Source of the DNA: Macrostomum lignano
Lineage: Eukaryota
Assembly: GCA_002269645.1 (NCBI GenBank)
Contig: NIVC01000001.1
Coordinates: forward strand, 1 to 64,000
DNA: 64,000 nt
Direction of reading: 5' to 3'
The notes under the pieces were generated by a model. That model did no database searches. It saw nothing but the letters and a program-made list of their open reading frames with translations, and was not told the origin of the DNA. Shown here piece after piece: positions 28,345 to 49,904 of the stretch (its first letter is position 1; each line of letters starts with the position of its first letter). The position numbers were made by a program, and so were the translations under genes.

Positions 28345-28614
28345 TCAACCAGACTTGAACAGCAGGATGGCCACCTGGCCCAGGTAGAAGTAGATGAAGT
28401 GCTTGGTCTCGTGGGTCACGTAGCTGCCAAAGTTGCGGCCGACGATGCAGTGCCAGGTCGGGTTGTACTTCTTGTCGAACTCCTTCTTGATGTAGGCGGC
28501 GATGTCTTTCTCGACGTTGAACTTCTCCAGAGCCTGGGTGGAGCAGTCAACGGCGTCCTGCTGCATGTCCTCGGACATGTCGGCGTTCTTGATGACGGCC
28601 TTGCGCTCAGACAT
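28345..28614 (-). CDS. DYNLL: Dynein light chain LC8 (DYNLL1/2-like), 89 aa, intronless CDS
   Basis: [24 protein letters not shown]...[42 protein letters not shown] is near-identical to canonical LC8. The true start is the internal ATG at 28614. Confidence 0.98.
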
Positions 28615-29474
28615 TCTGTGTAGCTGTCGGGTGGTTTCTAGCTGCTGAGGGAATTGAGAGATTGTTGGCTGCGAGATCGCGCTGGAATGCTGCTTGCTGG
28701 GAGGCTTCGACATTTATGCCGACGCTGCTGGGCAGCTTAGCTTCAGCAGTTAGGCGCAGTGGCCTTCGCCTATTGGCTGTCCCGGTCGGTGTTAGAGCCA
28801 GCAATTTAGCTTCAGTTCTCAGTAGTTTAGGCTGCTCCGCTCTGCGGGCTTTCAGTCTGATTGGCTGGAGCTCAGTCTGTCAGGTAAACTTACCTGCAGA
28901 AAACTGGCTTCGGATGGTTTTAGCTTGGGCGGGGGTTGCTCAAAGCTCGCTTTTGGGGTCAGTGGAAGCCCCACCCCGTCTCACCCACTATAACAACTCA
29001 GCTTGCATTCCTTGAGTTCGAGCAGTCCTCCCCCCCCCCAAACAGCGGCCTTCTCATTCATTGTTGTATTATCCATAGTAATGCGTAGGAAGGGAGGGCA
29101 TTCTATTAGCCAACAATTCAGTTTTTCATTCTTACGCTTGCTTGAACCATTTCTTTGTAGAACTTGACGCACACAGTTTAGAGAGTTCGTGCGGCGCTGT
29201 GTTAGCTTGTCGGTAGTACGCATGCATGCCCCCCCCCCCCGGCTTTGCTTGCTTAATTTCATAAGCAACTGCGAGTGCCGGCATTGCTTGCAACTTTCAT
29301 ATCTGTATATACGTTGCGGTTTCAATATAAATACTTGGGTCTTTGTTGTATAATATGATATAGTAAAATGCATCCAAGTTAGACCTTTTCTCTCAATTCT
29401 TGTATCTATTGACTCCCTTAACTTTGTGTGTCTTCTTTGCTTTTCAGTATCGGTTTTTTTCACTCCACCACCTC

Positions 29475-30410
29475 GTAGAGGGCGGAGTTCCCACTGGATA
29501 GAGGGCGGAGCTCCCACTGAGTAGAGGGCAGAGCTCCCACTGGGTAGAGGGCGGAGCTCCCACTGGGTAGAGGGCAGAGCTCCCACTGAGTAGAGGGCAG
29601 AGCTCCCACTGAGTAGAGGGCAGAGCTCCCACTGGGTAGAGGGCAGAGCTCCCACTGAGTAGAGGGCAGAGCTCCCACTGGGTAGAGGGCGGAGCTCCCA
29701 CTGGGTAGAGGGCAGAGCTCCCACTGGGTAGAGGGCGGAGCTCCCACTGGGTAGAGGGCGGAGCTCCCACTGGGTAGAGGGCAGAGCTCCTACTGGGTAG
29801 ATGGCGGAGCTCCCACTGGGTAGAGGGCGGAGCTCCCACTGGGTAGAGGGCGGAGCTCCCACTGGGTAGAGGGCGGAGCTCCCACTGGGTAGAGGGCAGA
29901 GCTCCCACTGAGTAGAGGGCAGAGCTCCCACTGGGTAGAGGGCAGAGCTCCCACTGGGTAGAGGGCAGAGCTCCCACTGGGTAGAGGGCAGAGCTCCCAC
30001 TGGGTAGAGGGCGGAGCTCCCACTGGGTAGAGGGCGGAGCTCGCACTGGGTGGAGGGCGAAGCTCGCACTGGGTGGAGGGCGGAGCTCCCACTGGGTAGA
30101 GGGCAGAGCTCCTACTGGGTAGAGGGCGGAGCTCCCACTGGGTAGAGGGCGGAGCTCCCACTGGGTAGAGGGCGGAGCTCCCACTGGGTAGAGGGCGGAG
30201 CTCCCACTGGGTAGAGGGCAGAGCTCCCACTGAGTAGAGGGCAGAGCTCCCACTGGGTAGAGGGCAGAGCTCCCACTGGGTAGAGGGCAGAGCTCCCACT
30301 GGGTAGAGGGCAGAGCTCCCACTGGGTAGAGGGCGGAGCTCCCACTGGGTAGAGGGCGGAGCTCGCACTGGGTGGAGGGCGAAGCTCGCACTGGGTGGAG
30401 GGCGGAGTTT
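29475..30410. repeat. 23-bp tandem repeat (GTAGAGGGCRGAGCTCCCACTGG)
   Basis: About 40 copies between the divergent DYNLL and TMEM129 genes. Confidence 0.97.
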
Positions 30411-30556
30411 TCACAAGGTAGAGGCCTGACGAGTTATTTCATAACTCAGTGTGCTTGATGCCTTGTTCTCAACTTCTCAACTCAACTATGCCCTATTCTA
30501 AGTTATGATTAATGTAGATTTCTGCGATTATCTCCAACAATTTTTGCTTTTTTTTC

Positions 30557-32337
30557 ATGGACGAAGAGCTCGAAGGCGTTTTCGACTGGTCCGACGCAGC
30601 CGATGACCAAATTGAAGCTGCCGCAGCAGCCGCCTGGCAAACTGGCGACGCCATTCACAGCCTCATCTTCGCCGCCCTGGCGCTTTGCCTGGTCGCTCCG
30701 CCCACCGAGGTGGTTAGCGCTGGCCTCACCGTTCAGAATCTGTTCAGGCGGTGGCTGCCCAGCGAACAGCTGCAGTTTGTTAGGCACCATCTGCATCGGA
30801 CTGCTCTAACTGTTCTGCTGCACTCGCTGCTACCAACGGTTTATTACGTCTACATGGCTGTCGCCTGTCCGCACCTGCAGCTCTTGCCGAATCCTCTGAA
30901 GGCTGCAGCTGTCTGGCGCTGCCTCGCCATCGTGGCCATCGCTGCGCCCGCCGCTGCCGCCTGCCTCTATTGGCGATGGACGCGAGCTGGTTTCCGGGTG
31001 AGCAGAGGGCGGAGTTCCCGGCGGGTAGAGGGCGGAGCTCCCATGCAGGGTGAGGGCGGAGTTCCCGGTGGGTAGAGGGCGGAGTTCCCGGTGGGTAGAG
31101 GGCGGAGTTCCCGGTGAGTAGAGGGCGAAATTCCATTGGGTAGAGGGCGGAGTTCCCGGTGGGTAGAGGGCGGAGTTCCCGGTGAGTAGAGGGCGAAATT
31201 CCATTGGGTAGAGGGCGGAGTTCCCGGTGGGTAGAGGGCGGAGTTCCCGGTGGGTAGAGGGCGGAGTTCCCGGTGGGTAGAGGGCGGAGTTCCCGTTGGA
31301 TAGAGGGCGGAGTTCCCGGTTGGTAGAGGGCGGAGTTCCCGGTGGGTAGAGGGCGGAGTTCCCGGTGGGTAGAGGGCGGAGTTCCCGGTGGGTAGAGGGC
31401 GGAGTTCCCGGTGGGTAGAGGGCGGAGTTCCCGGTGGGTAGAGACCACACAAGTCTACGAGTTTCCAGTGAGATGCAGCTGCATAGAATTCGCTGCCCCG
31501 TCTCCGCAGCACCACCCGATCGCGGCAAAGCTGGCCAGAGCCGCTCGCAACTCCAACTGGGCCGAAGTTGCCAGCGCAATCGATGTGGAATTTCGACGCT
31601 ACGACAAATTCGTTACTGGCCAGATGGGCAGACAGGTGCGAGAGGTTTAAATTGTGTTTTTATTGAGTTTGCTTTTTTCATTTTGCCGATTTTCCTTCCT
31701 TTTTCAAATCGATCGTCGGGCCCAGCTAATCGTGACGGACGGCTGGCTTCTGCAGACCAGCGCCTACACGGTGCAGGTCGCGCCGCAGGCCAGCCTGATG
31801 CTCCGAGTCCTGTCCGCCGATGAGCATCGAATCTCGCCGGACAGCGGGCCGCTTGGCGCCCAGATTCTTCGCATAGCGGTGATCCCGCTGGACTCGGACA
31901 GATTCCAGCAGTTCGAGGTGCGCGTCAATTCGGCAGTTTATAGCGACCTGCGCGAGAAGCTGACGGCTCCGGTCACCGCCGCCCAGTCTGTGATGATTCG
32001 GCAGTCGCTGAGCGACCAGTTTGTTGAGGCCTTCGCCGAGTGCGTCGCTGAGAATGGCCGGTTTCGGGGCGCCCCGGGCCAGCAGCCGCAGCAGCCGCAG
32101 CAGTGCCTGGGCTGTCTGAACCAGCCGGCCGACTGCCGCATCGCTCCGGGCTGCGACAGCGCCGGGAACTGCGGCGGATGCCGCTGCCAGCCGATGTGGT
32201 GCCGCGGCTGTCTTGGCCGATGGTTCGCCAGCCGGCAGGCCCAGGCTGGCAGAGAGACGGAGGCGTGGATGTCCGGCAAAGCGCCTTGTCCGACTTGCCG
32301 GGCCGAGTTCTGTGTGCTTGACGTGTTTCAACTGTGA
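30557..32337 (+). CDS. TMEM129: E3 ubiquitin ligase TMEM129, ~392 aa, 3 exons
   Basis: Exons 30557-30997, 31510-31635, 31726-32337, all phase 0. Motifs APPTEVVSAGLTVQNLF, EFRRYDKF, IVTDGWL and the C-terminal C4C4 RING CLGC...CRCQPMWCRGCLGRWFASRQ...CPTCRAEFCVLDV. Confidence 0.95.
31000..31442. repeat. 23-bp tandem repeat (GTAGAGGGCGGAGTTCCCGGTGG) in TMEM129 intron 1
   Basis: Variant of the 29475-30410 array. Confidence 0.95.
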
Positions 32338-35553: not shown

Positions 35554-37165
35554 TCACAGCTTGGCTCCCCCTCCCCCTCCGCCATCGAACCGTCCGCCCC
35601 GGCCGCGGCCGTCGCGCACAAAACCAGCAGCCCCGGTGGCCGCCTCCGCCAGCACTCGCTCGCCGCCGGTGAACTCCGCGGCCAGCCGGCTCAGTAGGCC
35701 GTCTGCATTGTTCCTGTCGTTCGTTGAACTGCCACAGTTGAAGTAGGCTGCTGCGACAGCTGATGCCCGGTCGGCTCGGGCGCAGGCCTGTAATACATTT
35801 AATAACCATATTTTTTATTAATCTCGAGTTACGAACCGGAAAGTGCAAAATGTACTTAGTAGCTATTTGCTATTAGCATTTACCCCCAGAAATTCTCCTC
35901 CCACCACCAAAATCCAAATTAAGGACATGTCTGAGAAAATCTACACCGGGGGAATCTATATATAGGTCAAAAGCGAAAAATGTCGAAAGACAGTTCAAAA
36001 TCGCCACAGCATTCCGCATATAGCTACTGTACAAGGATCAGCGCAGCTACAGAATTCAATGCTCTGCGACAGCCAACCTGCGGGAACGAGGCGATCTCCT
36101 CGGCCAGAGCCACCGCCGTCTGCAGAGCCTGGCCGTCCGGACAGACTCGATTAGCCAAGCCCATCTCGGCCGCCTCCCGGGCGCCAACCGGCCGGCCAGT
36201 CAAGATAAGGTCCAGCGCTCTGGACAGGCCAATCAGCGCCGGCAGCCTCACGGTGCCTCCGTCGATTAGCGGCACCCCGAACCGGCGGCAGAACACTCCG
36301 AGGGTGGCAGATGCTTCCACAACGCGGAGGTCGCACAGCAGCGCCAGTTCGAGGCCGCCAGCCACCGCGTATCCGCTGATGGCCGCCACGGAGGGCTTGC
36401 TGAGCCGCAGGCGGCTGGGACCCATTGGAGCCAAGCTGGCTTCATCTTGTTGAGGAATGGTTGTAGTTCATGGATTTGCGCGTAGGATCCTAGTAGAAGA
36501 GCAATTGCTGGTATGTACATGTACATATCTAAATGTTGGATATAAACGTTACTTAGATGCCTGGTTTGAGCTTTGGTAGATACCGGATGTTGACGTGTTC
36601 TGTAATCTGATGAAGACTACAAAGGCAACATAAAAGAATTCTGTGTGTCGGAGGCACTGCAGAAACTCAGTGGTGACCAGCTTTGAAGCGACCTGTAAAA
36701 TCAAGATGTACCTGCCTACGAGCTGGATTGGGTCTGTTATGCAAATTCTTCCAGACATTGTCATACAACCAGCGCTGAGACTCCTGAGCACAACATACAA
36801 GCGCACATGATAGCACGCACTCATACACACACTCACACAGGGGTGTACAGCTGACTTTTATCTAACAAGCAAAGACAGCTAGCGTGCCCCCTACCGGTCG
36901 CCACCGGGCCAAAGTGCGGCCTGATGCCATTCTCTGCGGCACCAAATTTAGCCGCCTCGGCCAAATCAAATCCGGAGCAGAAATTGCCGCCTCGGCCATG
37001 GAGCACCAGCACGCTGGACTCGGAGTCCTTTTCAAACTGCTTGAAAGCGGAGTAGAGCAGGCGGGCCAGCTCCGAGTTCACGCAGTTTCGCTTCTCTGGC
37101 CGGTTAAGACCAACAAGGAAGCAGCGGCCGGTTCTGGTCACTTCTAGTAGAGTCTGGGAGGCCAT
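35554..37165 (-). CDS. Enoyl-CoA hydratase/isomerase (crotonase), ~290 aa, 3 exons, C-terminal PTS1 (AKL)
   Basis: Exons 37165-36895, 36445-36078, 35787-35554 with consistent phases. Crotonase motifs LNRPEKRNCV, FCSGFDL, SKPSVAAISGYAVAGGLELALLCDLRV and LILTGRPVGAREAAEMGLANRV. Ends ...GGAKL*. Confidence 0.93.
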
Positions 37166-39238: not shown

Positions 39239-42200
39239 ATGGACGACTGCACCTTGGAAAAGCTGGGTGTAAAGCCGGGCCCTTTAACACCCGCCTTTAA
39301 CAAAAATGTTACCAGCTATTTCATCACGCTGGCTAGTGATGCTGAAGCCATCACCCTGGACCCGCGAACCAGCGACAATGGCGCCTCCTATGAGATTAAG
39401 GTAGTGCATCAGATCCTTGAAATTCAGCCAAAGTTTTCAATTGTTGGCTTTGTTTGAATAAAAAAAATTTCCATAACTGTCACAACAGGGCGGCGGAGGC
39501 GGTGGCAAAACGGTTCCTGTAGAGCCAGGAGCGAAGCTCACTCTGACTATTCAGGTCACAGCAGAGGACGGTCAAACCACCAGAAATTATGTGATCGCTG
39601 TGAACCGACTATCAGCCAAGGATGCCAGTTTGGCGTCCTTGACTGTTGGCCTGGAGGGCTGCCTGGAGCCCGCGTTCAGCCCGGAGCAGCTCAGCTACGA
39701 GTGTGAGGCGGGTCGGGGTGGCTGAATTGTCGATTAAAAATCAGCCCTGATAAATGGGGATAACAGAATGGCAATCTGTGTGGTGTCGTCATTGAAGAGG
39801 AGAGAAATACTCGTATGAAAGATTCATAATTATTACCAACAGAGACAAAAATCTTAGAGGAGAGAGGGGGAGAAGCAAGAGAGAGAAAAGAGAAGAGAGA
39901 GAGAGAGGGGTGAGCGAAAGAGGTAGAGAGGTAGCTAGAGGAGTAAAAGAGGTAGAAAAATAGAGGGACAGAGGGAAAGAGATAGAGAGACAGAGAGGTA
40001 CAGAGCAAGGACCACTAGAATTTACCGTTGTATCCGCTATGCTAGTAGATTCTAGTGATCCTTGGTAGAGAGGGAGAGAGGTAGAGAGATTAGAGATAGA
40101 GAGCGAGAGAGGGAGAGAGGTAAAGAGGTAAAGAGGGAGGGAGGGAGAGGAGAGAGGGAGAGAGAGGAGTAGAGAGGGAGGGAAGGAGAGAGATAAAGAA
40201 AGGGAGAGGGAGAAAGGGAGAGAGGGAGAGAGGTAGAGGTAGAGAGAGTTAAAGAGGAGACAGGTAGTTGGCGCTTGAGAGTGTCAACTCAAGCCCATAA
40301 AATCTCTATTCACTGCTCACCTTCAACCAGGCCAAGTTCCGTACTCGGCGACCACTCTGAAAGTGGAAGCGGCGGTGTCTGATTCGAAGATCGGGGTCAC
40401 AGTTCAGGCAGACGCAATGTCCGACGGAGCGGTGACGCTAAATCTGGGTGCCACCAGCGTGCTTATTGAGGTCCGGTCTGCGGACGGATCAACGAAGCGG
40501 GTAAGAGTCCTCCTTGCACCTGAAGATCCAACTGAACTAAAGATAATCTGAAGCAATCTTAGACGCTTAAAGACACCCAGGAAATGTTATCGATTCTTCT
40601 CTCCCCTCCTCTCTCCCCTTTTCTCTCCCCTCTTCTCTCCCTTCCTCTTTCCCTCCTCTTTCCCTCCTCTCCCCTCCTCTCCCCTCTTCTCTCCCCTCTT
40701 CTCTCCCCTCCTCTCTCCCCTCCTCTCTCCCCTCCTCTCTCCCCTCTTCTCTCCCCTCTTCTCTCCCCTCTTCTCTCCCCTCTTCTCTCCCCTCCTCTCT
40801 CCCCTCCTCTCTCCCCTCTTCTCTCCCCTCCTCTCTCCCCTCTTCTCTCCCCTCTTCTCTCCCCTCTTCTCTCCCCTCTTCTCTCCCCTCCTCTCTCCCC
40901 TCCTCTCTCCCCTCCTCTCTCCCCTCCTCTCTCCCCTCTTCTCTCCCCTCCTCTCTCCCCTCCTCTCTCCCCTCCTCTCTCCCCTCCTCTCTCCCCTCCT
41001 CTCTCCCTCCTCTCTTCCCTCCTCTCTCCCTCCTCTCTTCCCTCTTCCCTCCCTCCCCTCCCCTCCTCTCCCCTCCTCTCTCCCCTCCTCTCTCCCCTCC
41101 TTTGCCTTCTTCTCTATCCCTTCTTTTCTCTCCTCTCTCCTCCCTCCTCTTCAGTCCTCTTATCTTATACTTTTTATCTCATCCCATATCTCACCTCTCC
41201 TCTCTTCTCTCTTCTATCATCTTCTATTCCTTGTCCTCTCATCCGACCTGCAGCCTTGTTCTGGATTTTTTATCTGGCCTTTGAAGTAAAAAAGTTTGCC
41301 AATCCCTGGTTCAGTTTATAAATGGAGAATCTGTTTATAAAAATGCATAAAAGAGACATAAAAGAACAGCTGAAAACACAAACAGTCACCCTATAAGGAG
41401 TCAAGATACTCGCAGATGCCACAGAATCCACTGAAGGCGCGGGTCCTCAACCGCACTCAAAAAACTTAAACGCACGCAGCTGTACAGCCTCACCGTGCTC
41501 AGGGGCGTCTGTCCTCGGCACATTCAGCTGACCGACCCCGCCGAAGCCGCCAGCTTGGAGGATCCGATCAGCCTGTCGCTGCTGCACCGGCCAGTCAGCC
41601 TGCCGTCGTCAGCCGACCCAGCTCAGCTGTACTCAGCCCAGCTTCTGGACGCCGCGTTCCGCCCGAGTCGCACCGACCCGGCGGACGGTTCGCCGTTGCC
41701 GCCGTCCGAGACTGCCAACGCGGCTGCCGCAGCCAGCGGCGACATCAAGTGGCAGCCTCGTCCGGACGCCGCCGCCGACGCTCGGCTGTCCGCCTGTCCG
41801 GCCGAGATTGTCGATTTGCGCGCCGGCGCCGGCGGGGCATCTACTCTGCGCGCTAAAGCGGCGCGACAAATCGGCGCCGATCTAGCGGCGCGGACGTCGG
41901 CAAGTATGAGTGAGCTGCGCAAGAACTACCAGCACTGCAAGCCGGACGCCGCCACTGCGCCTGACGCCGCACGACAGTGGGAACGGCGGCTGAGGAACAT
42001 CTTCGACGTCAGCGACGCCAAACAGTTGGTGGAAATGGGAGAAAAGAGCGCTCAGCAGTACCTGGACAGCCTGCCAGAGGATCCAGGTGAGGCCTCGATC
42101 GGCGCATGAATGAGGGCACGGTTTTGTGGGGTTTACAACTGGGGGAGGGGAGAGAATCACAGCGCATGGGGTTTACAACTGGGAGAGAGAATCAGGGCAT

Positions 42201-45200
42201 GGGGTTTACAACTGGGGAGAGAATCAGAGCATGGGGTTTACAACTGGGGGGGGGAGAATCACAGGGCTTGGGGTTTACAACCGGGGGGAGAGAATCAGGG
42301 CTTGGGGTTTACAACCGGGGGGAGAGAATCAGAGCATGGGGTTTACAACCGGGGGGAGAGAATCAGAGCATGGGGTTTACAACTGGGGGAGAAAATCAGG
42401 GCATGGGGTTTACAACTGGGGGGAGAGAATCAGGGCATGGGGTTTACAACTGGGGGGAGAGAATCAGGGCATGGGGTTTACAACTGGGGGGAAGAATCAC
42501 AGGGCTTGGGGTTTACAACTGGGGGAGAGAATCAGGGCATGGGGTTTACAACTGGGGGAGAGAATCAGGGCATGGGGTTTACAACTGGGGGGAGAGAATC
42601 AGGGCATGGGGTTTACAACTGGGGGAGAGAATCAGAGCATGGGGTTTACAACTGAGGGAGAGAATCAGAGCATGGGGTTTACAACTGGGGGGAGAGAAGC
42701 AGGGCATGAGGTTCACAACTGGGGGGAGAGAATCAAGGTTAGGTAGTCAGATGCACATAGAGGGAGAGGCTGATCAGATGTACGTCCAATTTTGGGCCAT
42801 ACTAGTTAAAGCAACAGGAGCAACTCCTCTCATCCCTCGCAGCCATCAGCCGCAGCTACCCAGCCGGCAGCTCTCCACAGGACCACCTGCTGCGAGCCTG
42901 CAACGCGTACGCTTGCGCCATCGATGCAGCTGGCAGCTCTGCGCCCAACCGCTGGCAGCTGCACCTGCGGCTCGGTCAGCTGCTGGAGGAGATGCAGCAC
43001 TGCCAGGATGTGCGCGGAGTAAAAATCGCCGACGCAATGGCTGGCGACACTGGCGCGGCCACGTCCGCTGGCACGGACACCGCGGCTCTGGACAGCGCCA
43101 AGGAGGACGAGATCGACGCCATCTGCCGACTGCGCGGAGTGTCGGACAGCGCCGGACTTGGCGCCAAGCTGAGGGCGCTGGACGCCGAGATGCGACATCT
43201 AAGAGACCAGGTGAGAAGGGCTAATCAGTAATTAAATCTCATAATCTCAATAATTCCCCTCATGAGCCTTGACAGCTCAATAATTCCCCTCATGAGCCTT
43301 GACAGCTCAATAATTCCCATCATGAGCCTTGACAGCCCAGTAATTCTCCTCATGAGCCTTGACAGCTTAATAACTCCCTTTATGAGCCTTGACAGCTCAA
43401 TAACTCCCTTTATGAGCCTTGACAGCTCAATAATTCCCCTCATGAGCCTTGACAGCTCAATAATTCCCCTCATGAGCCTTGACAGCTCAATAATTCCCCT
43501 CATGAGCCTTGACAGCCCAGTAATTCTCCTCATGAGCCTTGACAGTTCAATAACTCCCTTTATGAGCCTTGGCATCTCCAAAATTCCGTTCACGGGCCTT
43601 GAAATTTCAGCAATTCCCACCGAGCCACAGAATTTCAGCGATTTCCCCCATAAGCCATGACCTCTTAACAATTCCCCCATGAACACAGTGGGGAATTATC
43701 ATTACGATCATCAATCGTCAATATCATTATGATTGTAAATAAATCATCAGAAAAGCGATAGCAACGTCCGACTTAATCTAATTGGCTAAAAATTTCATTA
43801 ACAAAACTGATTATATCTAACTCACTGGTTGAGCATTGAATTCCTTCAAGGGCCAAAGCTCCAAGGCGGACTCAGTGCAGTCTCTGTTCCTGTGGAAGAG
43901 TCGCCAGGCCACGGCGGAGGGCGCCGCCCAGCAGAGGGCCGCGTCGTCCGAGTCGCCGCTATCGCACGCGCTGGACAAATACCGAGACGCGCTCAGCCTG
44001 GCCGATTCCAATGGCGAGCTGCATTGCCACGTTGGAAGGCTAATGGTTGCTAGGGGCGAGTATGGGGAAGCCATTAGGTGAGATCATTTTTTAATACATT
44101 AAGTCGATTTCAATTTCTTTAATTATAACAGGGAAGAGTTAAAACAAAGTTTCAAGTCTCTAAACTGAGTTGGGGCAGAGAGAAAAGGGGTTGGTGTCTG
44201 AACTGGGTTGGGGCAGAGATGGAAGGGGTTTGTGTCTGAACTGGGTTGGGGCAGAGATGGAAGGGGTTTGTGTCTGAACTGGGTTGGGGCAGAGAGGGAA
44301 GGGGTTGGTGGCTGAACTGGGTTGAGGCAGGGGTTGGTGTCTGAACTGGGTTGGGGCAGAGAGGGAAGGGGTTTGTGTCTGAACTGGGTTGGGGCAGAGA
44401 TGGAAGGGGTTGGTGTCTGAACTGGGTTGGGGCAGAGATGGAAGGGGTTTGTGTCTGAACTGGGTTGGGGCAGAGAGGGAAGGGGTTGGTGTCTGAACTG
44501 GGTTGAGGCAGGGGTTGGTGTCTGAACTGGGTTGGGGCAGAGAGGGAAGGGGTTTGTGTCTGAACTGGGTTGGGGCAGAGATGGAAGGGGTTGGTGTCTG
44601 AACTGGGTTGGGGCAGAGAGGGAAGGGGTTGGTGTCTGAACTGGGTTGAGGCAGGGGTTGGTGTCTGAACTGGGTTGGGGCAGAGAGGGAAGGGGTTTGT
44701 GTCTGAACTGGGTTGGGGCAGAGATGGAAGGGGTTTGTGTCTGAACTGGGTTGGGGCAGAGAGGGAAGGGGTTGGTGTCTGAACTGTGTGGGGGCAGAGA
44801 GGGAAGGGGTTGGTGTCTGAATGTCTGAACTGGGTTGGGGCAGAGAGGGAACTTTATTCAGGACAGCGTCAGAGAGACACCGTCAGAGAGGTTGGTGTTT
44901 GAACTATGTTGGTGCAGAGAGAGAAGGGGTGGGTGTCTGAACTGAGTTAGAGCAGAGAGTGGATGGCTGAACTGTGTAAGGGGCAGAGAGGGAAGGGGTG
45001 GGTGTCTGAACTGGGTTGGGGCAAAGAGGGAAGGGGTGGGTGTCTGCACTGTGCTGGGGAAGAGAGAGAAAGGGAGTGACGGGAGCGTGAGTGACGGCAG
45101 AGGGAGGGAGTTTCTGAATTGCGTGAGGTCGAACGCTCTTACCACTCCAACCCTTTACTCGCAGACGCCTCGAGTCGGCCCTATCCTGGCAGCCGAATAA

Positions 45201-48200
45201 CCCTGCTGCTCGTCTCTACCTCGGCGCAGCACTTGCACGGGATATTCTCCAGTCGGGCAAGGACTCCCAGCCGCCCAGAGCGCCGGAGGCGATCGACCTG
45301 TTGTGCGACGGGTTGGAGACGCTGCTGCAGCGGCTGCAGGCGAAGCCCGAGTCCAAACGGTGCCTGTTTGCCGAGGAGCCGCTGCAGCCGACGGACCATG
45401 CACTGCTCAGAGCTTCCCTCTCTCTGGGCCAGCTGACTCCCGAGCAGCAGGGTCCGCTGCGGGCGGCCCGGCTGCACCAAGCCTGCCTGATGATCTCGCG
45501 GGCTCTGGCGCTGCTGCCGCCGCGCTGCGAACGGCGCCAGCTGGTGCGCCGGCTTCTCATCGATTGCCACGCAGCGCTGCTGCCGTCGAATCGAAGCGCG
45601 GCTGACGAGGCCGGTGAGCTGCTGCTAACGCGTCGCTGCCGCAGCCTGTCGGCGCTAATTGCCTCGGCGTCCTCGACGATGTCGGCGGATCCGGAGCTGG
45701 CAGCTCTGCAGCGCCGCGTGGCGGAGACTCTGGTCCGCGCCAACCCGTTCTGGTCGCCTGCGCTCTGTCAGCTTGGCGCCGCTCAGCTGGCGCGGGTGGA
45801 AGCTACGACGGAGCCGACGGATGCCGAGGAGCGCCGGCGATGCCTGGCCGACGCCGAGGCGTCGCTGCGAACAGCCATCGAGCTGGAGGGCCGACCGGCC
45901 GCGGGAACGACGCCGCCGGAGCGGCTGAGCAGCCAGGACTGGTGGCAGCGGGCCGACGCCGAGGAAGCCAAAGCAAAAGCGGCGGCGGAAGCGCCGAAAG
46001 CGGCAGCCGCCGCTGCGCCGCCGCCAGCTGCTGCAACTGCGCCTGCAAGTCGAGGCGGTGCCAGAGGTGCGGACCTCAATTGTAAAGTGCTTTCTGTATG
46101 CAGCTAGGGAAATAAAGTGCATCGTTACCATGCCCATCAGTTGAGGTTTGCCCAATGTCACAACAGCCCAGAAGCTCTGTCCAGCTAAAGGCCAGTGGCA
46201 GAGGTCAGAGATGATGCCCAGAGACAGGTTTATTAAATCTCATTATTTTCTAATTATTGATTTGCACAGGTGGCGTCAGAGGTGGCGCTGCTCAGACAGG
46301 GAGAGGCGCTGCCACCGCGCCAGCTCCTAGTAGAGGCGGCGCTGCTGCAAGAGGTGGCGCCACAAGAGGTGGCGCTGCTGCAAGAGGCGGCGCCACATCA
46401 ACAAGGGGTGGCGCTACCGCAACGAGAGGTGGAGGCGCCGCAGCTGCCAAAGGCCCCGCAGCCGCAAAAGCAGCGACTCCCGCTGAACCGTCGGCGCCGC
46501 AGACTCCGCAGCAACCGGCAGCCGAATCGGCGCCAGAATCTGCGCCAGTATCGGCGTCACAACCGGCGCCAAAGCCGTCAAAACCAGCGCCAATTAATCG
46601 TCCGAGCGCCGCTGCCCGGTTAACTCTGGCGCGCACCCTCCGCGCCGCGGAGAAGCCGGACGAGGCGCTGGCCATGTTCGAGGAGGCGCAGAGAATGTCG
46701 CCAGGCTGTCACGACGCCTACATCGAGGCCGCCGATATGCTCCTGGCCGGTCCGCAGCCGCTGCGCGCCGTGGACATCTACTGCCGATTCCCCGTCTCCG
46801 ACGCCGGCAATCCGTCATTTGACGACGCGTACATCTTCGGCGAAATTGTCCGCCTTCTGGTTAAGCACGAGAAGTTCGATGACGCCCGCCTGCCGGAGTA
46901 CATGATCAAGTGGGGCCGCGTCATGGGACTGCGTGAGTGCGAGCGGCCGGTTGTGTTGTTGTTGCTTGGTTGTGTTGTTTTTTGGTTGTGTTGTTGTTAC
47001 ATTGTTGTGTTGTTGTTTAGTTGTATTGTTGTTGCTTAGTTGTGTTGTTGTTGCTTGGTTGTGTTGTTTCTTGGTTGTGTTGTTTCTTGGTTGTGTTGCT
47101 GTTGCATTGTTGTGCTGTTGTTTAGTTGTGTTGTTGTTACTTAGTTAGGTTGTTGTTGCTTAGTTGTGTTGTTGTTACATTGTTGTGTTGTTGTTTAGTT
47201 GTATTGTTGTTGCTTAGTTGTGTTGTTGTTGCCTGGTTGTGTTATTTCTTGGTTGTGTTGCTGTTGCATTGTTGTGCTGTTGTTTAGTTGTGTTGTTGTT
47301 ACCTAGTTAGGTTGTTGTTGCTTAGTTGTGTTGTTGCTTAGTTGTGTTGTTGATTAGTTGTGTTGTTGATTAGTTGTGTTGTTGTTGCTTAGTTGTGTTG
47401 TTGTTGCTTGGTTGTGTTGTTTCTTGGTTGTGTTGTTTCTTGGTTGTGTTGCTGTTGCATTGTTGTGCTGTTGTTTAGTTGTGTTGTTGTTACTTAGTTA
47501 GGTTGTTGTTGCTTAGTTGTGTTGTTGTTACATTGTTGTGTTGTTGTTTAGTTGTATTGTTGTTGCTTAGTTGTGTTGTTGTTGCTTGGTTGTGTTATTT
47601 CTTGGTTGTGTTGCTGTTGCATTGTTGTGCTGTTGTTTAGTTGTGTTGTTGTTACCTAGTTAGGTTGTTGTTGCTTAGTTGTGTTGTTGCTTAGTTGTGT
47701 TGTTGATTAGTTGTGTTGTTGATTAGTTGTGTTGTTGTTGCTTAGTTGTGTTGTTGTTGCTTGGTTGTGTTGTTTCTTGGTTGTGTTGTTTCTTGGTTGT
47801 GTTGCTGTTGCATTGTTGTGCTGTTGTTTAGTTGTGTTGTTGTTACTTAGTTAGGTTGTTGTTGCTTAGTTGTGTTGTTGTTACATTGTTGTGTTGTTGT
47901 TTAGTTGTATTGTTGTTGCTTAGTTGTGTTGTTGTTGCTTGGTTGTGTTATTTCTTGGTTGTGTTGCTGTTGCATTGTTGTGCTGTTGTTTAGTTGTGTT
48001 GTTGTTACCTAGTTAGGTTGTTGTTGCTTAGTTGTGTTGTTGCTTAGTTGTGTTGTTGATTAGTTGTGTTGTTGATTAGTTGTGTTGTTGTTGCTTAGTT
48101 GTGTTGTTGTTGCTTGGTTGTGTTGTTTCTTGGTTGTGTTGTTTCTTGGTTGTGTTGCTGTTGCATTGTTGTGCTGTTGTTTAGTTGTGTTGTTGTTACT

Positions 48201-48944
48201 TAGTTAGGTTGTTGTTGCTTAGTTGTGTTGTTGTTACATTGTTGTGTTGTTGTTTAGTTGTATTGTTGTTGCTTAGTTGTGTTGTTGTTGCTTGGTTGTG
48301 TTATTTCTTGGTTGTGTTGCTGTTGCATTGTTGTGCTGTTGTTTAGTTGTGTTGTTGTTACCTAGTTAGGTTGTTGTTGCTTAGTTGTGTTGTTGCTTAG
48401 TTGTGTTGTTGATTAGTTGTGTTGTTGATTAGTTGTGTTGTTGTTGCTTAGTTGTGTTGTTGTTGCTTAGTTGTGTTGTTGTTGCTTGATTGTGTTGTTT
48501 CTTGGTTGTGTTGTTGTTGCATTGTTGTGCTGTTGTTTAGTTGTGTTGTTGTTACTTAGTTAGGTTGTTGTTGCTTAGTTGTGTTGTTGCTTAGTTGTGT
48601 TGTTGATTAGTTGTGTTGTTGATTCGTTGTGTTGTTGTTGCTTAGTTGTGTTGTTGTTGCTTAGTTGTGTTGTTGTTGTTTCTTTGTGTTGTGGCTTTAG
48701 TGTCAAAAAAGGGTTGAGAAAGTTGCTTCGAGCACTGCAATGCACTGGTCTTGATACTTTACAAGTGAATAATTTCAATCCCTGACGGCACACTCCATTC
48801 CCAGCCATCCTGGACAAGTACATTGCCACGCTGGAGGACAAGATGAAGACTGGAATCTGCAAGCAGGTCTACGCGGGAGTCAACGGGCGCTCAGTGGACG
48901 ACTTGGAAATGCAGGCCTTCTTCAAGGCCAGATGCTGGGACTGA
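39239..48944 (+). CDS. Uncharacterised ~1150-aa protein: two cadherin-like beta-sandwich repeats, U-box-like segment, TPR repeats, RGG/Ala-Pro linker; 9 exons
   Basis: Exons 39239-39400, 39489-39702, 40331-40500, 41480-42086, 42843-43210, 43851-44077, 45165-46066, 46270-46932, 48805-48944. All are GT-AG with matching phases and total 3453 nt. Motifs LTPAFNKNVTSY and LEPAFSPEQLSY..VTAEDG..Y (beta-sandwich), EDPISLSLL..PV..TDPADGSPL (U-box-like), and TPR-like helices. Confidence 0.88.
39850..40260. repeat. GA-rich low-complexity tract (intron 2 of TPR gene)
   Basis: Almost pure A/G. Confidence 0.9.
40598..41230. repeat. 12-bp CT-rich repeat (CTCTCCCCTCYT) in intron 3
   Basis: Tandem polypyrimidine units. 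Confidence 0.93.
42130..42735. repeat. ~33-bp G-rich minisatellite (GGGGTTTACAACTGGGGGAGAGAATCAGGGCAT) in intron 4
   Basis: About 18 copies with variable G-run length. Confidence 0.95.
43245..43575. repeat. 30-bp minisatellite (CATGAGCCTTGACAGCTCAATAATTCCCCT) in intron 5
   Basis: About 11 copies. Confidence 0.95.
44165..44850. repeat. 38-bp G-rich minisatellite (GTGTCTGAACTGGGTTGGGGCAGAGAGGGAAGGGGTTG) in intron 6
   Basis: About 18 copies, interspersed with shorter deletion variants. Confidence 0.95.
46950..48690. repeat. GTT/GT-rich degenerate microsatellite with a 353-bp higher-order period (intron 8)
   Basis: Landmark TGATTAG recurs at 47351, 47704, 48057 and 48410. Confidence 0.92.
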
Positions 48945-49904
48945 TGAGGACTTGAGATGCTGGGACTGATGAGGACTGGGGATGATGGAACTTTTGGAAT
49001 AATCGAACTGGACTGACGAAACATTAGATAAAAAATTATCGTAGCTTTTGCATGCCGCCAAACTGTACTATTAAATTCTGCATGAAACGTACTTTTAAAA
49101 TGTACTTCTATACTATTTTAGAAAACAGTGTTTAGAATTATTGTGTTTAGCTCGCGTTAAAACTCAAAGTCCTTGCTTCTATCTCGATCTACGTTCGCAC
49201 TTTCAATATAGAGCTTAGAATATGCCACTATTCGAATTATAAGTTGCTTCTCTGCTTTATTTTGTTTAATTCTCATTTTCATTCTCTACCGTCCAAATAT
49301 TTTATTCAATAAAATTTCGAATTTCTATGCTACTATTTTTCAGGTTTTTACAAATTTAACGAATTTTTTATTTGCATAAGCTGAGACTTTTAGGTTTATA
49401 AATAGATATAAAGGACATCATTTTTCCATATTTCTACTTTCAGTAGAGAAATTCGACTACTAGCTGGTTGTTTGAATAATTTTGTTTATCTTACACTGAT
49501 AAACTAATTTTCTAGGTCACTGCAAGGTCGCTCCAATCTGACTGTTTTTATTAGGACTTGGAGCAGCGATGCTCCCTCAGAACATGCCTGGGCCCTCGCT
49601 TCAAGTAAAATCTGCACGCGTTGACCTCGTGTGACCTTTACTGCTCTGTTTCTCTTGACCAACTGAAAAGTGCAACAACAAAGGCTCTAGCCTCTGCACT
49701 GCTGGAAATGGGTCAGTTAGAAGCCCAGCAACTTTAAGCCAGCCAAATACTTCCGTAACAATGCAAAAAAACCTTTGCTGTGTACTTTTACAGTTGCATT
49801 TCTTTGCAATCTCATGTATTTTTGCGCCTGACAGTCACATTGACGGCCCTGACAATGCCAATGACGCTCCTGATAAGTTCACTGGCGCCCTTGACATAAA
49901 CTTG

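What the first reader, a model, noticed from the sequence alone, without database searches (positions are those of the whole stretch)
39239..48944. Uncharacterised multidomain protein: cadherin-like beta-sandwich pair, U-box-like segment, TPRs and RGG, with no signal peptide
Seen: a nine-exon, phase-consistent 1150-aa ORF whose N-terminus is hydrophilic (MDDCTLEKLG). Established: the L.P.F......Y...VTAEDG..Y pattern is characteristic of the cadherin-like beta-sandwich domain (PF12733), best known from secreted bacterial proteins. U-box plus TPR is the CHIP-type E3 architecture. Inference: an intracellular scaffold or degenerate E3 ligase with an RGG RNA-binding linker and a compact, conserved-looking C-terminal domain (FDDAYIFGEIVRLL...MQAFFKARCWD). 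I cannot assign a named gene.
Basis: partly seen in the sequence, partly recalled or inferred. Interest (0 to 1): 0.7.

Follow-up and report, generated by a model that had tools for sequence, protein, structure and literature searches.

The report
Zinc-less RING-derived scaffold protein, flatworm
This is a real nine-exon gene of the flatworm Macrostomum lignano that encodes a member of an old, completely unstudied animal protein family whose ubiquitin-ligase RING finger has lost every zinc-binding residue and now looks like a U-box.

Summary
Nine GT-AG, phase-consistent exons (39239-48944, + strand) give a 1150-aa protein. It is 100% identical to GenBank PAA94727.1, a hypothetical protein of Macrostomum lignano.

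Two cadherin-like beta-sandwiches, TPRs, nine RGG motifs and the lack of a signal peptide or membrane segment are all confirmed.

The "U-box-like" call is right in kind and can be made sharper. Full-length orthologues, all named "uncharacterized", occur in a ctenophore, a hemichordate, a crinoid, amphioxus, fishes and molluscs.
- In the ctenophore the aligned segment is a true C3HC4 RING.
- In Saccoglossus only one zinc site survives.
- In most bilaterians only relic ligands remain.
- In Macrostomum 0 of 8 remain.

A profile of the segment plus the following zinc finger matches the TRAF6 RING-ZnF1 (E 4e-9) and RNF125 (8e-9). The Cys-less members alone match U-boxes (hhalign 85%).

It is not a CHIP relative, because the domain order is reversed. 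It is not a TRAF either, because there is no MATH domain.

In Macrostomum the RING/zinc-finger region also evolves faster than the TPR solenoid (p = 5e-5). A TPR/beta-sandwich scaffold with weak or lost ligase activity is therefore the best reading. Function is untested. Interest is moderate.

The parts
39239..48944 (+). Whole coding region. Nine exons (39239-39400, 39489-39702, 40331-40500, 41480-42086, 42843-43210, 43851-44077, 45165-46066, 46270-46932, 48805-48944), 1150 aa, stop TGA at 48942-48944.
   Evidence: all introns are GT-AG and the phases are consistent; 100% identical to GenBank PAA94727.1; colinear with orthologues.
39239..39614 (+). Cadherin-like beta-sandwich 1 (aa 1-96; spans intron 1). 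It starts at Met1 (MDDCTLEKL), so there is no leader peptide.
   Evidence: PF12733, aa 8-94, profile positions 3-88 of 89; 47% mean identity to orthologues.
39615..41503 (+). Cadherin-like beta-sandwich 2 (aa 97-190; spans introns 2 and 3).
   Evidence: second PF12733 stretch; beta strands at 102-186 in the orthologue model, pLDDT ~90.
41546..41701 (+). RING-derived, zinc-less U-box-like segment (aa 205-256: SLEDPISLSLLHRPVSLPSSADPAQLYSAQLLDAAFRPSRTDPADGSPL). The eight RING ligand positions read D210, S213, S226, Q231, S234, L237, D248 and D251.
   Evidence: ligand table; ctenophore zf-C3HC4. TRAF6 4e-9, RNF125 8e-9; all 18 PDB hits are RING/U-box; hhalign 84.9% against U-boxes.
41750..41968 (+). 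Remnant of the TRAF6/RNF125-type C2HC zinc finger(s) that follow the RING in orthologues (aa 273-345). The ligands are lost and the segment is Ala-rich and poorly conserved.
   Evidence: C-x6-C-x11-H-x3-C in chordates and the crinoid, a second finger in the ctenophore, crinoid and hemichordate, none here; 13% identity.
41969..45951 (+). TPR / alpha-solenoid body (aa 346-845; spans introns 4-6). It includes the Pfam-significant TPR at aa 569-608.
   Evidence: continuous helical hairpins at 337-816 in the orthologue model, pLDDT mostly 75-95. Foldseek finds only TPR solenoids.
45952..46589 (+). Disordered Ala/Pro-rich linker with nine RGG motifs (aa 846-990; RGG at aa 879-938 = 46051-46433; spans intron 7).
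   Evidence: pLDDT 24-35 in the orthologue. RG-rich in all orthologues; 33-bp repeat at 46332-46397.
46590..48941 (+). C-terminal TPR pair (aa 991-1060) plus a family-specific helical tail (aa 1061-1150: FDDAYIFGEIVRLL...MQAFFKARCWD). Spans intron 8.
   Evidence: TPR signal at aa 997-1055; 47-49% identity; helices, pLDDT 80-90; no PDB or Pfam relative for the last 95 aa.

Best explanation
The gene encodes the Macrostomum lignano orthologue of an ancient, uncharacterised cytosolic protein family of animals.

The ancestral plan was: two cadherin-like beta-sandwiches, then a C3HC4 RING, then one or two TRAF6/RNF125-type C2HC zinc fingers, then a ~500-residue TPR solenoid, then an RG/RGG-rich disordered linker, then a TPR pair with a family-specific helical tail. 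That is the plan of a substrate-recruiting RING E3 ubiquitin ligase.

Within the family the RING lost its zinc ligands step by step and became U-box-like. The flatworm copy is the end point: 0 of 8 RING ligands remain and the adjoining zinc finger is erased.

I think the flatworm protein works mainly as a TPR/beta-sandwich scaffold that brings partners together, possibly on RNA or RNP granules through its RGG linker. Any E2 recruitment by the zinc-less RING remnant is weakened, or possibly lost.

Shown: the gene model, the domain identities, homology of the segment to RING/U-box domains, the pattern of ligand loss, and the faster evolution of this region in Macrostomum.

Inferred: ligase ancestry as a function, scaffold behaviour, RNA binding, and cytosolic location (from the absence of a leader peptide).
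For: Gene and organism.
- 100% identity to PAA94727.1.
- Orthologues in a scallop, Aplysia and Plakobranchus, amphioxus, teleosts, a ray, a bichir, a crinoid, Saccoglossus and a ctenophore are all "uncharacterized" and colinear.

RING ancestry.
- The ctenophore orthologue matches zf-C3HC4 over positions 1-40 of 40 at 22.4 bits, above the cutoff of 21. Saccoglossus gives a partial RING.
- Ligand table: ctenophore 8/8. Saccoglossus and an unplaced eukaryote keep site 1 only (C1, C2, C5, C6). The other bilaterians keep C1 and usually H4 (amphioxus and one fish also C6). Macrostomum keeps 0/8.
- The profile of the RING+ZnF segment against the PDB gives TRAF6 RING-ZnF1 at E 4e-9, RNF125 at 8e-9, then LNX, TRAF5, RING2, the PUB12 U-box and SIAH1.
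- A profile of Cys-less members alone returns only RING/U-box chains (18 of 18; best is the PUB12 U-box at 0.024).
- hhalign against a small U-box alignment gives 84.9%, E 6.5e-6, in register: CPIS/PV/Y/DP..PL.
- The Pro after the seventh ligand position is invariant in all 12 sequences. The hydrophobic residue two positions after C1 is kept in all of them. By general knowledge of RING/U-box-E2 complexes these are E2-contact positions.

Fold.
- AlphaFold2 of the mollusc orthologue with an 18-sequence alignment gives pLDDT 77.7 and pTM 0.69.
- The segment shows loop, two short strands, central helix, loop at pLDDT 77-92.
- It is followed by a beta-beta-alpha unit, a solenoid, a disordered RG linker and a helical C-terminus.

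Degeneration in Macrostomum.
- The ex-zinc-finger region is only 13% identical to orthologues.
- Between the window protein and its 97%-identical homeolog, 11 of 20 substitutions fall in aa 191-345 and 1 in TPR aa 346-640 (Fisher p = 5e-5).
- In both closest solved relatives the zinc finger next to the RING is needed for activity (PMC4944129 for RNF125; PMC5702613 for TRAF6).

No leader peptide or membrane segment.
Against: - No Pfam U-box or RING model matches the flatworm protein itself.
- The Cys-less-only PDB hits are individually weak (E 0.02-1).
- The fold evidence comes from a mollusc orthologue, and only as secondary-structure order and confidence. I could not superpose the isolated segment on a RING or U-box.
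- The motif core is still recognisably conserved in Macrostomum (35-50% identity to orthologues; E2-contact Ile212 and Pro249 are kept). True U-boxes are fully active without zinc, so an active ligase is not excluded.
- No orthologue has a basic "linchpin" residue after the last ligand position. That argues neither way, since many active RINGs lack it.
- The homeolog comparison rests on 20 substitutions. For the 52-residue core alone it is not significant (p = 0.06).
- There are no expression, localisation or binding data for any family member.
Confidence: 0.6

Rival explanations
1. It is an active, zinc-independent U-box-type E3 ubiquitin ligase. The Cys-less RING remnant still folds through hydrogen-bond and salt-bridge networks, binds an E2~ubiquitin and modifies substrates held by the TPR solenoid and the beta-sandwiches, as canonical U-boxes do.
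For: - The motif ECP[IV][ST]L..LY.P[IV]SI..SDPKH.[FY]S.P.I..LTR.SK.DP....PL is strongly conserved across Cys-less deuterostome and mollusc orthologues. That implies a folded, selected module.
- It aligns in register with U-boxes.
- The E2-contact Ile/Val and Pro positions are kept in every member, including Macrostomum (I212, P249).
- AlphaFold2 is confident on the mollusc segment (pLDDT 77-92).
- The U-box is accepted to be a zinc-less derivative of the RING (Aravind and Koonin 2000, from my own knowledge).
Against: - In Macrostomum the neighbouring zinc finger is erased. That finger is essential for activity in RNF125 and TRAF6 (PMC4944129, PMC5702613).
- The region evolves about 20 times faster than the TPR body between homeologs.
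- No Pfam U-box hit.
Confidence: 0.3
2. The model joins two neighbouring genes, or mis-joins exons: a cadherin-like/RING gene and a TPR gene.
For: Older M. lignano models of this locus or its homeolog are truncated (P0001, 678 aa) or frameshifted (P0191). This shows that automatic prediction struggles here, probably because of the repeat-filled introns.
Against: - Orthologues from seven phyla are colinear from MDDC... to ...FFKFKCW in one protein.
- One orthologue is a single uninterrupted 3390-nt ORF.
- GenBank PAA94727.1 has the same 1150 residues.
- All splice sites are canonical and in phase.
Confidence: 0.03
3. It is an extracellular or surface adhesion-type protein, as the bacterial relatives of its cadherin-like domains are.
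For: PF12733 is found overwhelmingly in large bacterial surface and secreted proteins. Those are the closest sequence relatives of the N-terminal pair (E 7e-30 to 1e-8).
Against: - The first beta-strand starts at Met1 in every orthologue, with no hydrophobic leader and no membrane segment.
- The rest of the protein (RING-derived module, TPR solenoid, RGG linker) is typical of cytosolic or nuclear proteins.
Confidence: 0.04

Closest known systems
TRAF6 RING + zinc finger 1 module (PDB 3HCS/3HCT, 5VNZ/5VO0)
   Same: This is the best sequence match of the family's RING+ZnF profile (E 4e-9; profile positions 3-98 against TRAF6 17-108). It shares the same order of RING, linker helix and C-x(n)-GC-x11-H-x3-C finger.
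   Different: - There are no further TRAF zinc fingers, no coiled coil and no MATH/TRAF-C domain.
- The N-terminal cadherin-like pair and the C-terminal TPR solenoid are absent from TRAFs.
- In the flatworm all zinc ligands of both units are gone.
RNF125 / RING-UIM ligases (PDB 5DKA, 8GBQ)
   Same: Second-best match (E 8e-9). The crinoid orthologue hits Pfam zf_C2HC_14 (E 1.4e-4). A RING is packed against a C2HC finger that is needed for E2 binding (PMC4944129).
   Different: There is no UIM and no C2H2 fingers. The protein is far larger and has TPR and beta-sandwich domains.
U-box domains (PUB12, PRP19, CHIP/STUB1, UFD2)
   Same: Both are zinc-less RING-like modules. Cys-less family members align in register with U-boxes, including the CPIS and DPxxxxPL motifs.
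   Different: - No Pfam U-box match.
- The zinc loss appears to have happened inside this family, starting from a TRAF6/RNF125-like RING.
- CHIP has a 3-TPR clamp N-terminal to a C-terminal U-box, which is the opposite order and scale.
Bacterial PF12733 cadherin-like beta-sandwich proteins, and human CPED1
   Same: They share the same Pfam domain, here in two copies. CPED1 is a named vertebrate protein described as having this domain (PMC5739604).
   Different: - The bacterial proteins are secreted or surface proteins with many repeats.
- CPED1 is named for a PC-esterase domain.
- None of them combines the domain with a RING-derived module and TPRs.
TPR-solenoid scaffolds (CTR9, SKI3/TTC37, IFT139/TTC21B, OGT)
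   Same: These are the top Foldseek matches of the orthologue model (E 6e-7 to 1e-3). They share the long TPR superhelix.
   Different: TM-scores are at most 0.18 and identity is 10-14%. This is a generic repeat resemblance with no evidence of orthology.

Membership tests
Cadherin-like beta-sandwich (Pfam PF12733) | Match to the Pfam model above its gathering score | tested here: met
   97.5 bits against a cutoff of 24.2. Two stretches; the best is aa 8-94 over profile positions 3-88 of 89.
TPR repeat proteins | At least one TPR model above its gathering score, plus a helical-hairpin solenoid | tested here: met
   TPR_11 29.6 (cutoff 26.8) and TPR_19 25.9 (cutoff 25); helix-turn-helix array at 337-816 and 938-1090 in the orthologue model. 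TPR solenoids are the only fold matches.
RING finger (C3HC4) | Eight zinc ligands in cross-brace spacing | tested here: not met
   the window protein has D, S, S, Q, S, L, D, D at the eight positions (0/8). The ctenophore orthologue has 8/8 and passes zf-C3HC4.
RING finger (C3HC4) | Sequence homology to RING domains | tested here: met
   the family profile matches TRAF6 at 4e-9 and RNF125 at 8e-9, among dozens of RING chains; with Cys-less members alone, 18 of 18 hits are RING/U-box.
U-box (Pfam PF04564) | Match to the Pfam U-box model | tested here: not met
   no hit at E<=1 for the window protein; no hit at E<=10 for the mollusc orthologues; only a weak zf-Nse hit at 0.092.
U-box (Pfam PF04564) | RING-like fold kept without zinc ligands | tested here: inconclusive
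   hhalign 84.9% in register with U-boxes; loop, beta, beta, helix, loop order at pLDDT 77-92, but in the mollusc orthologue only and without a 3-D superposition.
U-box / RING E3 ligases | Binds an E2~ubiquitin and stimulates ubiquitin transfer | not testable with these tools
   This needs a biochemical assay. Only the conservation of E2-contact positions (I212, P249) was seen.
TRAF family | C-terminal MATH/TRAF-C domain and coiled coil after the RING and zinc fingers | tested here: not met
   no MATH or zf-TRAF Pfam hit in the window protein or in eight orthologues. A TPR solenoid follows instead.
CHIP/STUB1-type E3 | N-terminal three-TPR clamp followed by a C-terminal U-box | tested here: not met
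   the RING-derived segment (aa 205-256) precedes about 800 residues of TPR and linker. The nearest relatives of the segment are TRAF6 and RNF125, not CHIP. The EEVD-clamp residues were not examined.
RGG-box proteins | Clustered RGG repeats (tri-RGG: three RGG separated by 0-4 residues) in a disordered region | tested here: met
   RGGARGGVRGG at aa 879-889 and nine RGG in aa 879-938; the equivalent region of the orthologue has pLDDT 24-35. RNA binding itself is not testable here.

The most novel reading that the evidence does not exclude
Living orthologues of one ancient animal gene preserve a stepwise, family-internal conversion of a zinc-binding TRAF6/RNF125-like RING into a zinc-free U-box-like domain.

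The stages are:
- 8 ligands in a ctenophore;
- one intact zinc site in a hemichordate and an unplaced eukaryote;
- relic ligands in chordates, molluscs and a crinoid;
- none in a flatworm.

In this reading the zinc-free forms remain working E3 ligases. That would make the family a second, independent origin of the U-box solution and a natural series for asking how a RING can dispense with zinc. The family also joins a bacterial-type cadherin-like pair to a cytosolic ligase, and it seems to have been lost from tetrapods.
Probability: 0.3. Interest if true: 0.65.

Novelty: new variant of a known kind. Interest (0 to 1): 0.45.

Why it matters
All parts of the protein are known domain types. The family as a whole has never been described: every orthologue in public databases is "uncharacterized" or "hypothetical", and six full-text searches for its accession numbers and gene identifiers found nothing.

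It combines domains in a way not seen in studied E3 ligases: a cadherin-like pair, a RING-derived module and a long TPR solenoid.

If the zinc-free members are active, the family offers a graded natural experiment on how RING domains turn into U-boxes. If they are inactive, it is a clear case of a ligase turned into a pure scaffold while the rest of the protein stays under strong constraint.

Either way it is a tractable target. M. lignano allows RNAi and transgenesis.

The patchy distribution also makes it a candidate for a lineage-loss study. It is present in a ctenophore, ambulacrarians, amphioxus, fishes, molluscs and a flatworm, and it was not seen in tetrapods.

Tried and rejected
- **Spliced protein in remote tools.** I therefore used orthologues, and I have no model of the flatworm protein itself.
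- **First AlphaFold2 run.** With a 3-sequence alignment it was useless (pLDDT 44). The 18-sequence run was good.
- **Foldseek on the whole model.** It returned only generic TPR solenoids. I could not submit the RING-like segment alone, and coordinates are not exposed to scripts.
- **Single-sequence searches of the mollusc segment.** phmmer against the PDB found nothing. Only profiles worked.
- **Third word-indexed homologue search.** Run with a trimmed ortholog alignment, it failed to recover the orthologues. Its hit P0191, named "CNOT1_TTP_bind", is a frameshifted old model of this locus or its homeolog, not a real fusion.
- **C-terminal 95 aa.** No PDB or Pfam relatives.
- **Rfam on 38-50 kb.** Nothing found.
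- **Bacterial promoter/terminator scan.** Irrelevant for this eukaryotic gene.
- **Cilia link.** Rejected as unsupported.
- **CHIP homology.** Rejected on domain order and nearest relatives.
- **Taxon of the intronless orthologue P0053.** It could not be determined.


Full report

Yes. Reading the sequence around each proposed boundary and assembling the exons in a script gives nine + strand exons: 39239-39400, 39489-39702, 40331-40500, 41480-42086, 42843-43210, 43851-44077, 45165-46066, 46270-46932 and 48805-48944.

All eight introns are GT...AG with pyrimidine-rich acceptors. The phases (0,1,0,1,0,2,1,1) are consistent. The CDS is 3453 nt, giving 1150 aa and ending at TGA 48942-48944.

The window comes from the flatworm Macrostomum lignano. 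The spliced protein is 1150/1150 identical to GenBank PAA94727.1, "hypothetical protein BOX15_Mlig013536g1, partial". It is 97% identical to a second M. lignano copy, UniProt A0A1I8G618, a truncated 678-aa model.

The protein is colinear from its first to its last residue with 1063-1285-aa proteins of other phyla. One orthologue is a single uninterrupted ORF. The "two separate genes" refutation therefore fails.

**2. Domain content**

- Pfam gives Cadherin-like PF12733 at 97.5 bits (cutoff 24.2) in two copies.
- It gives TPR models above cutoff at aa 569-608 and TPR signal at aa 997-1055.
- It gives no U-box or RING hit.
- There are nine RGG motifs at aa 879-938, including the tri-RGG RGGARGGVRGG.
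- No hydrophobic stretch could serve as a leader peptide or membrane segment.

**3. The family**

An exhaustive HMMER search with a profile of two mollusc orthologues and the flatworm homeolog P0001 was dominated by huge bacterial proteins with many cadherin-like repeats. It also found 13 eukaryotic clusters that match along the whole profile.

Their database names are all "uncharacterized" or "hypothetical":
- Molluscs: Mizuhopecten, Tegillarca, Aplysia and Plakobranchus.
- Cephalochordate: Branchiostoma.
- Teleosts: Embiotoca, Brachyistius, Salminus and Astyanax.
- Other fishes: the bichir Erpetoichthys and the ray Narcine.
- Other phyla: the crinoid Anneissia, the hemichordate Saccoglossus and the ctenophore Bolinopsis.
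- One intronless gene sits on a 697-kb metagenomic contig of an unidentified eukaryote.

No tetrapod, arthropod or nematode protein is among the listed hits. A full-length orthologue should have scored above the list's floor of 393 bits, since the ctenophore scores 601. This suggests loss in those lineages, but I did not test it directly.

Full-text searches for the accession numbers and gene identifiers found no paper.

**4. What the "U-box-like segment" is**

In the 14-sequence alignment (columns re-read) the flatworm segment LEDPISLSLLHRPVSLPSSADPAQLYSAQLLDAAFRPSRTDPADGSPL aligns with other orthologues as follows.

| Orthologue | Aligned sequence | RING ligand state |
|---|---|---|
| Ctenophore | LLCGVCSSLYQCPRRLLQCSHSFCTVCLAVSQRTDKKCPTCS | Complete C3HC4 RING |
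| Saccoglossus | CPIC...FCLPC...DPLDESPL | Only the first zinc site (ligands 1, 2, 5, 6) |
| Metagenomic orthologue | not quoted | Only the first zinc site |
| Chordates, molluscs, crinoid | ECP[IV][ST]L...H.[FY]S...DP....PL | Only C1 and usually H4 (amphioxus and one fish also C6) |
| Macrostomum | D, S, S, Q, S, L, D, D at the eight positions | None |

Pfam recognises the ctenophore RING over its full length (zf-C3HC4 22.4 bits, cutoff 21).

Right after it, chordates and the crinoid carry C-x6-C-x11-H-x3-C. The ctenophore, crinoid, hemichordate and the metagenomic orthologue carry a second C-x2-C...H...C finger. Molluscs and Macrostomum have lost both.

Three further results support the homology.
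- A profile of RING plus finger from 12 orthologues matches TRAF6 RING-ZnF1 (E 4e-9, spanning both units and the linker helix), RNF125 (8e-9), LNX, TRAF5, RING2, the PUB12 U-box and SIAH1.
- A profile built only from the nine Cys-less members returns 18 PDB chains at E<10. All 18 are RING or U-box domains, led by the PUB12 U-box at 0.024.
- hhalign of that profile against a four-sequence U-box alignment gives 84.9% probability and E 6.5e-6, in register.

The segment is a RING that has lost its zinc ligands, as U-boxes have. The loss appears to have happened inside this family, starting from a TRAF6/RNF125-like RING plus C2HC-finger unit.

**5. Fold**

A 3-sequence alignment failed (pLDDT 44). 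An 18-sequence alignment gave pLDDT 77.7 and pTM 0.69. The model shows:
- two beta-sandwiches (residues 6-186, pLDDT ~90);
- the RING-like segment as loop, strand 216-219, strand 227-229, helix 230-240, loop (pLDDT 77-92);
- a beta-beta-alpha unit at 269-292, where the zinc finger used to be;
- a helical solenoid at 337-816;
- a disordered RG-rich linker at 820-935 (pLDDT ~25-35);
- a helical C-terminus at 938-1090 (pLDDT 80-90).

Foldseek of the whole model against the PDB finds only generic TPR solenoids such as CTR9, SKI3, IFT139 and OGT, at TM at most 0.18. I could not search the RING-like segment alone.

The last 95 residues have 68% mean column identity across orthologues. They have no relatives in the PDB or Pfam.

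**6. How it most likely works**

The ancestral plan is that of a substrate-recruiting RING E3: binding modules (a beta-sandwich pair and a TPR solenoid) around a RING-ZnF catalytic adaptor.

In both closest solved relatives the finger next to the RING is needed for activity.
- In RNF125 it stabilises the RING for E2 binding (PMC4944129).
- In TRAF6, ZF1 and the linker helix contact ubiquitin (PMC5702613).

The flatworm copy has lost all ligands of both units. Its ex-finger region is only 13% identical to orthologues, whereas the first beta-sandwich, the C-terminal TPRs and the tail are 47-49% identical.

Between the two M. lignano copies, 11 of 20 substitutions lie in aa 191-345 and only 1 in the TPR body at aa 346-640 (Fisher p = 5e-5). 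For the 52-residue core alone, p = 0.06.

My best reading (confidence ~0.6) is a cytosolic TPR/beta-sandwich scaffold with a vestigial, weakened E2-recruiting module. The conserved RG/RGG linker may tether it to RNA or to methyl-arginine readers.

The main rival (~0.3) is an active zinc-free U-box-type ligase. It is supported by the strong conservation of the Cys-less motif in deuterostomes and molluscs, and by the retained hydrophobic residue after ligand 1 and the invariant Pro after ligand 7 (I212 and P249 in the flatworm).

**7. Comparison with known systems**

- It is not a CHIP relative. The domain order is reversed, the TPR region is many times longer, and the nearest relatives of the segment are TRAF6 and RNF125.
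- It is not a TRAF, because it has no MATH domain or coiled coil.
- It is not a Pfam U-box.
- It is a new architecture built from known domain types.

The cadherin-like pair is closest to bacterial surface-protein repeats (E down to 7e-30). Here it starts at Met1 of a leaderless protein.

The cilia suggestion has no support.

**8. Verdict**

The gene is real and ordinary in its parts, but it belongs to an unstudied, ancient and patchily retained animal family. The most interesting point is the graded loss of RING zinc ligands among orthologues, with the flatworm at the fully zinc-less end. Interest is moderate (0.45). I class it as a new variant of a known kind.

Noticed in passing
window 40064-40267, 40598-41101, 42147-42735, 43246-43602, 44159-45074, 46950-48692: Six of the gene's eight introns are largely filled by a different tandem repeat each: AG-rich; 12-bp x43; 34-bp x17; 30-bp x12; 38-bp x25; and 19-bp x98 organised in a 353-bp higher-order unit x4.9. 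They create long spurious ORFs in all frames.
   Followed up: partly
window 28345-28713 (-): A single-exon ORF encodes an LC8-type dynein light chain (Pfam Dynein_light, E 3e-43) with a 37-residue N-terminal extension.
   Followed up: partly
window 30557-32337 (+): Two ORF pieces match the N- and C-terminal parts of TMEM129 (Pfam Tmpp129, E 2e-24 and 2e-65). By my own knowledge TMEM129 is an ER-resident RING E3. It is unrelated to the finding. Tandem repeats lie on the opposite strand around 29000-31500.
   Followed up: partly
window 36024-37165 (-): Exons of an enoyl-CoA hydratase/isomerase family gene (Pfam ECH_1, E 1.5e-23 and 1.5e-10).
   Followed up: partly
window 45237-49009, compared with P0191 and P0001: Older public M. 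lignano gene models of this locus or its homeolog are wrong. One is truncated at 678 aa. The other (UniProt A0A1I8FIU5, named CNOT1_TTP_bind) is a frameshifted translation of exons 7-9.
   Followed up: yes
L001 2001-5390 / L002 10001-13390 (ENA ERZ25069837, contig ctg28026): An intronless 1129-aa orthologue lies next to an intronless eukaryotic glutathione synthase on a 697-kb metagenomic contig of an unidentified eukaryote. It keeps zinc site 1 of the RING and the second zinc finger. Its G+C (51-55%) is higher than that of its flanks (38-45%).
   Followed up: partly
window 46332-46397: Part of the RGG-coding stretch of exon 8 is itself a 33-bp tandem duplication. The RGG array may therefore grow by repeat slippage.
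   Followed up: no
window 48925-48975: The last codons and the stop (GCTGGGACTGATGAGGACT) are repeated once immediately downstream of the stop codon. This is a small local duplication in the 3' UTR.
   Followed up: no
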